From Salpingoeca rosetta (Eukaryota; Protista; Choanoflagellata), in NCBI GenBank assembly GCA_033442325.1, contig JAWQFM010000028.1, positions 164,749 to 228,748 on the forward strand: a stretch of DNA of 64,000 bases. The letters are read 5' to 3'. The notes beneath the pieces were generated by a model, which worked only from the letters and a program-made list of their open reading frames with translations, did no database searches and had not been told where the DNA came from. Position numbers and translations under genes: made by a program. Positions 44,301 through 47,300 of this stretch are shown here, in pieces; position 1 is the stretch's first letter, and each line of letters starts with the position of its first letter.

Positions 44301-47300
44301 GCGGAGGCGGCCAACCTCCCCGAGACCGACGAAGCGGATGTGGAATCCGAGGCCAGCAAAGCCCGGACACTGAACCGCCGCTCACACATGGGCGCCTCTG
44401 TGCGGTCGCTGGCGGCTCTGCAGAGCAACGCGGGCATGCTGGTGGTGAAGAACGTGGTGGATGACATGACGCAAGAGGACCTGTCCAGTGGTCCTGCGTG
44501 CATGGGGCCGATGCTCAGCGAAGAGCAGTTCAAGCAGCTTGACCAGCGGCTCCTGGACGTGTCCCAGCTGCCAGAGGGCGTGCTGCCGCTGTGCAGATAC
44601 AAGAACGTGCTGCCCACACCGGCCACGCGCGTGCGGCTGCCGTCACTCGCTGTTCGCGGCATCCCAGTGGAGCATGCGGAGTTCATCAACGCCAACTGGG
44701 TACGGGACTGGACGGGCGAGCGGCGGTACATTGCGACGCAGGGGCCCAAGCCCAACACCGTGGAGCACTTTTGGCGCATGGTGTGGGAGTACGACTGCCC
44801 ACTCATTGTGATGGTGACGTCGCTTGTGGAGAACGGGCGCATCAAGTGCCACCGGTACTGGCCCGAGTTCTCTGGCGCCAAGGGCAGCGAGCTCGTGTCA
44901 AATGTCATGGAGCTGGACTGCGGCATGCTGGTTGAGGTGGAGGAGGTAGAGCGATACCGGGAGTACGCCATCACATACATCCGCCTGCAGTGGAACAACA
45001 CGGAGAAGTTTGTGCGCCACATGCACTTGCACCACTGGCCGGACTACGGCGTGCCAAAGTCCACGCGCTCGCTCGTGACGTGTGTTGATGTGATTCGCGA
45101 CATCATGAACCGCGCCGAGGACGACAAGCCGCTTGTTGTGCACTGCTCCGCTGGCATTGGCCGCACGGGCATTGTCCTGTCTGTGCTGATGGGCGTTGAA
45201 GTGTTGCTTGCACGCCAGCGCCTGCACATGCCTGCCATTGTGCAATCGCTCCGTTGCGACCGTGGCGGCATGATGCAGACGTTTGAGCAGTACGAATTCT
45301 CATTCAAGTGCGTCATCGCCGGCTGCGTCTTGCGTGCTGCATGTGCTTAGTGTTGTGCTGTGTGTGTGTTGCGTAAGATTAGTGTTGTGTGTGTTTCTGT
45401 TGCGTGAGATTAACGTGTGTGTGTGTTTCTGTTGCGTGAGATAAAAATGTGTGTGTGTGTGTGTGTGTGCGTTGTACTGTGCATGGTGATGTTGTTTTGC
45501 GATTCGATCATCAATCCCCACAATCATCATTCCACCAACCCACCAACCAACCCATCACCAATCACTCACACTAACCCCCCTCTCCCCCTCCCCTTCTTCC
45601 AACTGCTTGCTCCTGCAGGGCGCTGGGGGCATATGCGCGTCGCGAGGCGTTCATGGCGTACCTGATGAACAACACGGACAAGCAGCAGCAGATTCTGGAT
45701 ATGGTGGCTGACGTGCTCAAGACCCCCGTGCCTTCCGTCTCACAGTCCGTTCCGCCCGCCAACGCATCCGAGCAGGAGATGATGCGTGCGCAGATTACGC
45801 GCTTCTGCGAGTTTATGCACAGGGGACAGGCTGAGCCCGTGCTTGGCTTCCCAGAGCTGTCGGCGTTCTGTCCTGGCTGGCACCTGCAACGCGACGTGTA
45901 CGCGCTCTCGCTCGCAGATCCCAGCGCGGAAGCGGCGAGAGGCGGGAAACACCGGCGTAAGAGCAGTACGGGCAGCAGCGTGCACTCGACCGCAGAGACA
46001 CGTGCCCAGAACGACAACGGCGGTGGTGGTGATGGTGGCGAGGATGGCGATGGCAATGATGATGGTGGTGGTGACAGCGAGCAGCCGACAGAGTCTGCCG
46101 TGATCCCCTTCCACGAGCTGCTGTTTGTGGACGAGGAGCAATCCACCACCATGCGCAAGGGCGTGATGCAGGTGCGGCCTCGCACGGTTTGACTTTCTGC
46201 TGCTGCTGCTGCTGCTGCTGTTGTTGTCTTGTCTTGTCTTGTTTTGACAGCGGTGCACTGTGCATGTTGTCGGTAGACACACACTCACACACGCACGTCA
46301 TTCCTCTGCTCCACACTCACCATATGTACATACATACGCACGCACATACGCACACACATACGCACACACACACACACACACACACGCACATACAGCCTGT
46401 CATCCGCCTGCGTGCGGGCTCGGGCAACGCCGGTGAGGGCCATTCCCTTAACCTGCTCCCCTTTGCACACGCGAGCAAGAAGTACGCACTGAACCTGGAT
46501 GGTGAGGGCGTGTTCCTCATCACAGATCCGCGGGATGGCGACGTGTATGTCGTCAACAACACCTTCCACGATATCCGTGTTCGCAGCATCGAATCCTCCG
46601 TTGCTCTCTGGATCCCAGGTGCGTTGGCTCTCTGTGCACGTGCGCGTCTCTGACGTTTGGCTGGTGTGGACGTGAGGTTGCGTGTGGCTGTTGTTTGCAC
46701 AGGTGTTTGCACAGGTGTTTGCGTGTGGCTGGTGTGTGGACGTGCATTCGTGTACGTGCTGTATGCCCGCTGCTCACGTGGCTCCTCGTCCCCACTTCCA
46801 CCACCACCTCCGCACTGCGCCGCGGCTTGTAGGCCACCCGTGCATCAACGCCAAGCGAGCGCGACTGGTGTGCGCTGGACAGACGATCCGGCTGTTCAAC
46901 ACAGACACGCTCCGCCACGCCATGTCGCACGTGATGGGGGCGCACATGGACAAGGGCAAGAAGGCCCTCATGCACGCCGTGTCCATGTGCCAGGCAGACA
47001 TTCTGCTCCACCCAACAAAGCACACCAAGGCTGTGATTCGCGTGCACTACCGGGCGGCAGCAGCAGAGATGGCGCGCTGCTTCGACGCCATTCTGGACTC
47101 GCGTCGTCCAAACCAGCGCCGGCGCTCTAGCGTGGTGGAGCTGCTCGGCTCGCGGTGGTTTGAGCTGAACAAACTCGCTGCCGACCGCCCCATCTCCCGT
47201 GCTCCGTCACCTGTCAACGATGACATGTTTCAGGGGCATGACGTCACGGCCACGCTGGCCCCGCCCACTGGCCGCGAGCCGCTGTTTGGCGCAGAGGAGG

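What the first reader, a model, noticed from the sequence alone, without database searches (positions are those of the whole stretch)
46099..47060. Smad MH2-like domain in a myosin tail
Seen: spliced sequence after the PTP reads IPFHEL...[39 protein letters not shown]...[37 protein letters not shown]. Established: R-Smad MH2 runs [28 protein letters not shown]...KIPPGCNLKIFN..QGFEAVYQLTRMC. Motif order matches, and the G-x2-A-x6-MC spacing is exact. The L3-loop KGWG motif and a C-terminal SSxS are not evident. Inference: a Smad/FHA-fold module used outside TGF-beta signalling, on an actin motor, in a probable non-animal.
Basis: partly seen in the sequence, partly recalled or inferred. Interest (0 to 1): 0.85.

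Follow-up and report, generated by a model that had tools for sequence, protein, structure and literature searches.

The report
Known MH2-like domain in choanoflagellate myosin

Summary
Observation confirmed. The three exons 45619-46171, 46396-46618 and 46833 onward have GT..AG introns. Stranded RNA-seq and transcript contigs show them joined exactly as proposed.

The gene encodes an N-terminal protein kinase, a myosin motor, a coiled coil, an apparently intact tyrosine phosphatase, the flagged domain, an IQ motif and a disordered tail.

Interpretation supported, though the fold is not shown. The window's own exon pieces hit nothing in Pfam. A 31-34% identical environmental ortholog carries most of the domain on one exon. 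Both AlphaFold models were too poor to use (pLDDT 50-53).

This is not new. Sebe-Pedros et al. 2014 (PMC3942036) reported a Salpingoeca rosetta myosin III-like protein with a C-terminal MH2 domain and proposed that MH2 arose on myosins before Smads. Kollmar & Muehlhausen 2017 describe animal class-80 myosins with MH2.

Small additions here:
- RNA-verified exon structure.
- Four to five uncultured relatives; the phosphatase-to-domain link is kept in one, the domain-to-IQ link in two.
- A conserved RRSS-type motif just after the last predicted helix.

The scan's only other note on this is the same stretch read again (s1-435944).

The parts
36818..37548 (+). Exons of the N-terminal protein kinase domain ([26 protein letters not shown]); further kinase-like exons lie at about 35480-37975
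   Evidence: Pfam Pkinase 55.7 bits for 36818-37213 and 18.4 bits for 37339-37548; motifs read
38462..43657 (+). Myosin motor domain, spread over many exons
   Evidence: Pfam Myosin_head hits on 38462-38941, 39046-39825 and 42662-43657
44592..45307 (+). Classical protein tyrosine phosphatase domain (WPD loop and [10 protein letters not shown] both present), preceded by a charged coiled-coil stretch from about 43968. The exon ends at 45307
   Evidence: Pfam Y_phosphatase 215 bits, E 1e-63. The exon end is shown by RNA reads that carry ...EQYEFSFK joined to 45619
45619..46099 (+). Linker exon part. It holds a conserved helical stretch (around FCPGW) and then a Gly/Asp-rich low-complexity insert (about 45990-46075) that is absent from the L007 relative
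   Evidence: tblastn to L007 684-1010; no Pfam hit
46100..46171 (+). Start of the MH2-like domain: first predicted strands ([11 protein letters not shown]...)
   Evidence: Translation. Contiguous with the next part in relative L001, which has no intron here
46172..46395 (+). Intron (224 nt, GT..AG, CA/TG microsatellite-rich)
   Evidence: Zero RNA depth; transcript contigs skip it exactly
46396..46618 (+). Middle exon of the MH2-like domain: strand-rich part ending W-I-P-G
   Evidence: RNA coverage; 38-47% identical in L001, L007 and L002
46619..46832 (+). Intron (214 nt, GT..AG). Its position and phase are shared with L001 and L007
   Evidence: 18 spliced reads plus 2 contigs; junctions found in the relatives
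46833..47110 (+). C-terminal half of the MH2-like domain: strand [13 protein letters not shown], two helices, invariant C-Q-[AV]-[DE], strand, a short loop where Smads have the long L3 loop, strand VIRVHY, helix [14 protein letters not shown]
   Evidence: Family alignments A1, A3. The Pfam MH2 hit of the ortholog maps onto 46516-47017
47120..47131 (+). Conserved RRSS motif, 9-10 residues after the last predicted domain helix. Variants in relatives: RRSS, RRAT, RRGS, KRQS, RRSSS
   Evidence: Alignments; coordinates. The function is inference only
47132..47215 (+). Conserved extra helix (LG-x-[RK]-W-x-[ED]-LN) and an S-R-x-P-[ST]-P motif that close the conserved block
   Evidence: Invariant G, W, L, N columns
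47696..47746 (+). IQ-like calmodulin/light-chain-binding motif downstream of the domain, conserved in L001 and L004
   Evidence: Pfam IQ E 0.0027, 17.8 bits, below cut-off; conservation

Best explanation
The region encodes a divergent MH2 domain (the Smad C-terminal protein-binding domain, SMAD/FHA superfamily). It sits in the tail of a single-copy myosin III-like protein of a choanoflagellate, most likely Salpingoeca rosetta. The domain order is kinase, myosin motor, coiled coil, tyrosine phosphatase, MH2-like domain, IQ motif, disordered tail.

Shown:
- The exons are transcribed and joined.
- The domain is conserved under selection in several uncultured relatives. One of them keeps it next to the phosphatase; two keep it followed by the IQ motif.
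- An ortholog hits the MH2 profile and nothing else.

Inferred: as in Smads, the domain serves as a protein-protein interaction or oligomerisation module. It would tether partners, possibly phosphorylated ones, to a motor that also carries a kinase and a phosphatase, rather than acting in transcription. It has a short loop in place of the Smad L3 loop and no terminal SSxS, so it is unlikely to be driven by a TGF-beta-type receptor.
For: - Splicing and expression.
- Domain order by Pfam: Pkinase, Myosin_head, Y_phosphatase at 215 bits.
- MH2 is the only Pfam hit of ortholog L002:160-687: E 0.0022, profile positions 71-152.
- Conservation in L001, L002/L003, L004 and L007, with a shared intron phase in L001 and L007.
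- L007 carries the phosphatase end, the linker and the domain on one contig.
- Single copy in the genome.
- Literature: an S. rosetta and an Oscarella carmela myosin III-like protein with a C-terminal PF03166 domain (PMC3942036); animal class-80 myosins with a C-terminal MH2 (PMC5583752); MH1 and MH2 on separate proteins in choanoflagellates (PMC6040629; PMC6792448).
- The order of secondary-structure elements in the two low-confidence models (four strands, strand, two helices, strand, helix) is compatible with the C-terminal two thirds of an MH2 domain. This is weak evidence.
Against: - The MH2 score (18.7 bits) is under Pfam's 25-bit cut-off and comes from a relative, not from the window.
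- The window's exon pieces and the N-terminal half from L001 give no MH2 hit at E<=10.
- The six-frame PF03166 scan of the whole genome found nothing. A domain cut by two introns would be missed this way.
- Sequence and profile searches of the PDB find no Smad, IRF or FHA chain.
- ESM Atlas feature searches gave no lead.
- The fold is unverified: pLDDT 52.7 and 50.1, and Foldseek found nothing.
- I could not confirm by accession that the published S. rosetta MH2 myosin is this gene, nor by name that the genome is S. rosetta. The genome size of 55.4 Mb matches my recollection of that species.
Confidence: 0.8

Rival explanations
1. A lineage-specific globular tail domain of mixed strand/helix type with no evolutionary link to MH2. 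On this reading the 18.7-bit Pfam hit and the motif order are coincidence, and the published S. rosetta MH2 myosin is another gene.
For: - No hit for the window's own pieces.
- No Smad in PDB sequence or profile searches.
- The Atlas searches gave no lead.
- The models are unusable.
- The family is tiny: 5 clusters among 1.8 billion representatives.
Against: MH2 was named before the test and was the only family hit among 24,736, in the right register. The genome has no other MH2 candidate and no paralog of this domain, while the literature says the species has an MH2 on a myosin III-like protein. By my recollection of Smad sequences, the domain length (about 190 residues) and element order fit MH2.
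Confidence: 0.15
2. A member of the wider SMAD/FHA superfamily that is closer to FHA or to the IRF association domain than to Smad MH2 proper. It would be a phospho-threonine or phospho-serine reader of another branch.
For: The Smad-specific L3 loop motif and SSxS tail are absent, and the score against MH2 is only marginal.
Against: Neither FHA (PF00498) nor IRF-3 (PF10401) appeared at E<=10 for any piece, while MH2 did. The two helices between strands and the terminal helix are MH2-like features that FHA domains lack; this last point rests on established knowledge, not on a test here.
Confidence: 0.05

Closest known systems
Salpingoeca rosetta / Oscarella carmela myosin III-like proteins with a C-terminal MH2 (Sebe-Pedros et al. 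2014, PMC3942036)
   Same: A choanoflagellate myosin of the kinase-bearing myosin III-like group with an MH2 (PF03166) in the tail. This is most likely the very same gene. The paper already proposes that MH2 began as a myosin-borne interaction domain and was later fused with MH1 to make Smads.
   Different: The paper's text gives no coordinates, exon structure or residue-level description. Gene identity could not be checked by accession, because the supplements held as text carry no per-sequence table. The domain here is not at the very C-terminus: an IQ motif and a long disordered tail follow it.
Animal class-80 myosins with a C-terminal MH2 (Kollmar & Muehlhausen 2017, PMC5583752)
   Same: A myosin motor with an MH2 domain in the tail.
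   Different: Class-80 myosins are animal proteins. The choanoflagellate kinase-bearing myosins are treated there as orphans near class 3. The text read gives no sign of a tyrosine phosphatase in class 80. Relationship not tested here.
Smad MH2 domain (Pfam PF03166)
   Same: Marginal but specific profile match over positions 71-152. The order of elements is the same: strand block, strand ending in FN, two helices ending in C, strand, loop, strand, terminal helix.
   Different: There is no MH1 on the protein. The loop at the L3 position has 7 residues instead of about 17, and lacks KGWG (a remnant FGKG is in the L002 relative). There is no terminal SSxS. An extra conserved helix and an RRSS motif follow the domain.
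Metazoan class III myosins
   Same: An N-terminal STE20-like kinase fused to a myosin motor, with IQ motifs.
   Different: Class III tails carry no tyrosine phosphatase and no MH2.

Membership tests
MH2 domain (Pfam PF03166, SMAD/FHA superfamily) | Match to the PF03166 profile at or above the gathering score (25 bits) | tested here: inconclusive
   The window's exon pieces give no hit at E<=10. Ortholog exon L002:160-687 scores 18.7 bits, E 0.0022, as the only family hit. The spliced window protein has no reference and could not be submitted. A PF03166 hit on an S. rosetta myosin is published.
MH2 domain (Pfam PF03166, SMAD/FHA superfamily) | Beta-sandwich capped by a three-helix bundle | tested here: inconclusive
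   AlphaFold2 on partial domains gave pLDDT 52.7 and 50.1. Foldseek against the PDB found nothing at E<=0.001. The split-domain co-fold gave no answer.
MH2 domain (Pfam PF03166, SMAD/FHA superfamily) | Long L3 loop with a KGWG-type motif between the last two strands | tested here: not met
   The window has a 7-residue loop, HPTKHTK, between ADILL and VIRVHY. Only the L002 relative keeps FGKG.
Smad proteins (MH1 + linker + MH2) | N-terminal MH1 DNA-binding domain on the same polypeptide | tested here: not met
   Upstream of the domain are a kinase, a myosin head and a phosphatase. MH1-like genes are noted elsewhere in this genome by other first readers, and the literature places MH1 and MH2 on separate proteins in choanoflagellates.
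Receptor-regulated Smads | SSxS phosphorylation motif at the extreme C-terminus | tested here: not met
   The protein continues for hundreds of residues. A conserved internal RRSS lies 9-10 residues after the last helix; whether it is analogous is unknown.
Myosin III-like group (kinase-myosins of Filozoa) | N-terminal protein kinase followed by a myosin motor on one transcript | tested here: inconclusive
   Pkinase (55.7 bits) and Myosin_head hits lie in order on the + strand. RNA continuity was checked only from the phosphatase exon onward. No motor-domain phylogeny was made.
Classical protein tyrosine phosphatases (PF00102) | Profile match plus WPD loop and HCxxGxxR[ST] catalytic loop | tested here: met
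   215 bits, E 1e-63. WPDYGVP and [11 protein letters not shown] are read in the ORF 43968-45350.

The most novel reading that the evidence does not exclude
The conserved RRSS-type motif 9-10 residues after the last MH2-like helix would be a pre-animal counterpart of the R-Smad phospho-tail. It would be phosphorylated by a basophilic kinase, possibly the protein's own N-terminal kinase, and bind back to an MH2 pocket, switching the motor's tail between closed, open or oligomeric states. That would place the phospho-tail/MH2 switch before the origin of Smads and TGF-beta receptors.
Probability: 0.07. Interest if true: 0.7.

Novelty: already known. Interest (0 to 1): 0.25.

Why it matters
An MH2 domain on a myosin in the closest relatives of animals bears on how Smad transcription factors arose. 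The published view is that MH2 began as a motor-borne interaction module and was later joined to MH1 by domain shuffling, so the finding itself adds no new concept.

What this check adds is practical:
- An RNA-verified exon map of the domain.
- Evidence that the domain stays next to the phosphatase in one uncultured relative and ahead of the IQ motif in two.
- Residue-level differences from Smad MH2: a short loop at the L3 position and a conserved RRSS after the last helix. These would guide a structural or biochemical study, which nobody appears to have done in the library searched.

Tried and rejected
- **PF03166 over the whole genome in six frames:** no candidate. This is uninformative for a domain split by introns, and the tool's control genomes are prokaryotes.
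- **Pfam on the window's separate exon pieces:** nothing.
- **phmmer and profile searches of PDB sequences** with exon pieces, alignments A1 and A3, and L002: only chance-level hits, no Smad.
- **ESM Atlas feature searches** on three pieces: no lead.
- **The search for homologous proteins** with the exon-2 region and with A3: nothing new.
- **AlphaFold2** on the window's exon-3 piece and on the L002 exon: pLDDT 52.7 and 50.1, unusable. Foldseek on the second model gave nothing, which is meaningless at that confidence.
- **Complex prediction** on the two halves of the L001 relative, used as a split-domain test: 'no answer', score 0.00. My alignments were not used. This is not evidence either way.
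- **Spliced domain:** Proteins of the window's own genome are withheld from the protein libraries, so the annotated full-length protein could not be fetched.
- **Real Smad sequences** could not be obtained, so no profile-profile comparison was made.

Full report
**What is there.** The three introns around and inside the region (45308-45618, 46172-46395, 46619-46832) all begin GTGCG and end AG.

Public RNA data settle the splicing:
- In a stranded raw-read RNA-seq run (X21) the exons are covered and both internal introns have zero depth.
- 18 reads from 12 start points cross 46618|46833.
- Transcript contigs of two other studies (X4, X8) run 45619-46171, then straight into 46396, then 46831-47300.
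- 16 reads join 45619 to the end of the upstream phosphatase exon (...EQYEFSFK, 45307).

**The gene.** On the + strand, in order, Pfam finds:
- A protein kinase: 55.7 bits on 36818-37213, with [11 protein letters not shown] and GTPYWAAPE.
- A myosin head spread over exons from 38462 to 43657.
- A charged coiled-coil stretch.
- A classical tyrosine phosphatase: 215 bits, with the WPD loop and [10 protein letters not shown] present.

After these come a conserved linker, a Gly/Asp-rich insert, the flagged domain (about 46100-47215), an IQ-like motif (47696-47746, 17.8 bits) and low-complexity sequence with no Pfam hits.

This agrees with another first-stage note on this window, which reads kinase, motor and phosphatase on one polypeptide (s1-436030). 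The assembly has 55.4 Mb in 68 contigs. Together with the CA/TG-rich introns and the literature below, I take it to be Salpingoeca rosetta or a very close relative.

**Relatives.** A search of 1.8 billion representative proteins with the exon-3 piece found only five clusters, all gene fragments from metagenomes. The contigs behind them, plus one more from a pattern scan, are L001 (Tara Oceans, 68% identical), L002/L003, L004 and L007.
- L001 carries the first two thirds of the domain on one exon, without the window's first intron. It then has a GT..AG intron at the same codon phase after W-L-P-G.
- L007 has that same intron. Upstream on the same contig it carries the end of a tyrosine phosphatase and the conserved linker, so the phosphatase-to-domain link is not peculiar to this genome.
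- L001 and L004 keep the IQ-like motif after the domain.
- The domain has no paralog in the window's genome.

It is therefore a real, conserved, single-copy module.

**Is it MH2?** The window's own exon pieces hit nothing in Pfam at E<=10. A six-frame PF03166 scan of the genome found no candidate, which is expected for a ~190-residue domain cut into three.

The most divergent relative, L002, carries the part of the domain that the window splits between exons 2 and 3 on one exon. Scanned against all 24,736 Pfam models, its only hit is MH2:
- E 0.0022, 18.7 bits (cut-off 25).
- Residues 12-103 against profile positions 71-152 of 174.

Because the family was named beforehand, the relevant chance expectation is about 0.0022/24736 per sequence. 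That is about 1e-6 after allowing for the roughly ten family pieces I scanned. I regard homology to MH2 as likely, at about 0.8.

**Evidence against, or missing.**
- No Smad, IRF or FHA chain appears in sequence or profile searches of the PDB.
- Language-model feature searches gave no lead.
- The fold could not be verified. The spliced domain has no single reference, so I could fold only parts. Both models were poor (pLDDT 52.7 and 50.1), and the Foldseek result on such a model means nothing.
- A split-domain co-fold returned 'no answer'.

**Differences from Smad MH2.**
- The loop at the L3 position has seven residues (HPTKHTK) and lacks KGWG. Only L002 keeps FGKG.
- There is no MH1 and no terminal SSxS.
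- After the last helix ([14 protein letters not shown]) come a conserved RRSS-type motif (47120-47131), a further conserved helix (LG-x-[RK]-W-x-[ED]-LN) and an S-R-x-P-[ST]-P motif.
- The RRSS sits about as far after the last helix as SSxS does in R-Smads. This comparison rests on my memory of Smad sequences. I record it only as a lead.

**Already known.**
- Sebe-Pedros et al. [quoted passage not shown] They state that the single MH2 of choanoflagellates is on a myosin, and propose that MH2 arose as a myosin-borne interaction domain later fused with MH1.
- Kollmar & Muehlhausen 2017 define animal class-80 myosins by a C-terminal MH2.
- Richter et al. 2018 and Lopez-Escardo et al. 2019 list MH1 and MH2 as choanozoan domains on separate proteins in choanoflagellates.
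- Pang et al. 2011 mention an MH2-like domain with a zinc finger in Monosiga.
- Other first-stage notes report MH1-like genes without MH2 elsewhere in this genome.

I could not match the published protein to this locus by accession. The genome has no other MH2 candidate and this gene is a kinase-bearing myosin, so identity is very likely.

**How it probably works.** By analogy with Smads, the domain would be a protein-binding or oligomerising module in the tail of a motor that also carries a kinase and a tyrosine phosphatase. It would recruit partners or couple tails, possibly in a phosphorylation-dependent way. It has no DNA-binding partner domain and no receptor-type phospho-tail. All of this is inference from family knowledge; nothing here tests function.

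**Verdict.** Interest is low for novelty. The residual value lies in the exon map, the environmental orthologs and the RRSS lead.

Noticed in passing
window 47120-47131 (and the aligned positions in P0001-P0005 and L007): An RRSS-type basophilic-kinase consensus is conserved in all family members, 9-10 residues after the last predicted helix of the MH2-like domain. From memory, that is roughly where R-Smads carry SSxS. It is followed by a conserved S-R-x-P-[ST]-P motif at 47195-47215.
   Followed up: partly
window 45990-46075: A Gly/Asp-rich low-complexity insert (GGTGGTGATGG-type repeats) lies just before the domain. It is absent in relative L007. Unrelated contigs pile up on it in the reads table (depth 175-580 against about 26 beside it).
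   Followed up: no
window 45619-45900; L007 684-1007: A stretch of about 95 residues between the phosphatase and the MH2-like domain (around F-x-P-G-W) is conserved between the window and L007 but has no Pfam hit. It could be an unrecognised small helical module or a phosphatase extension.
   Followed up: no
window 47696-47746; L001 about 1310-1400; P0003 about 205-230: An IQ-like motif lies in the tail downstream of the MH2-like domain, far from the motor's neck. It is conserved in two relatives together with the preceding ANVADFR[10 protein letters not shown] stretch.
   Followed up: partly
window 36818-37213: The kinase has DFD in place of the usual DFG magnesium-binding motif, while HRD and the APE-type motif are kept.
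   Followed up: no
window 35000-50500, introns generally: Most introns of this gene are filled with (CA)n/(TG)n and related microsatellites, and all three donors checked read GTGCG. These repeats make long spurious ORFs on both strands.
   Followed up: no
other contigs of the same genome (notes s1-435315, s1-438665): First-stage notes report MH1-like genes without MH2 elsewhere in this genome. This fits the published picture of MH1 and MH2 on separate proteins in choanoflagellates.
   Followed up: no
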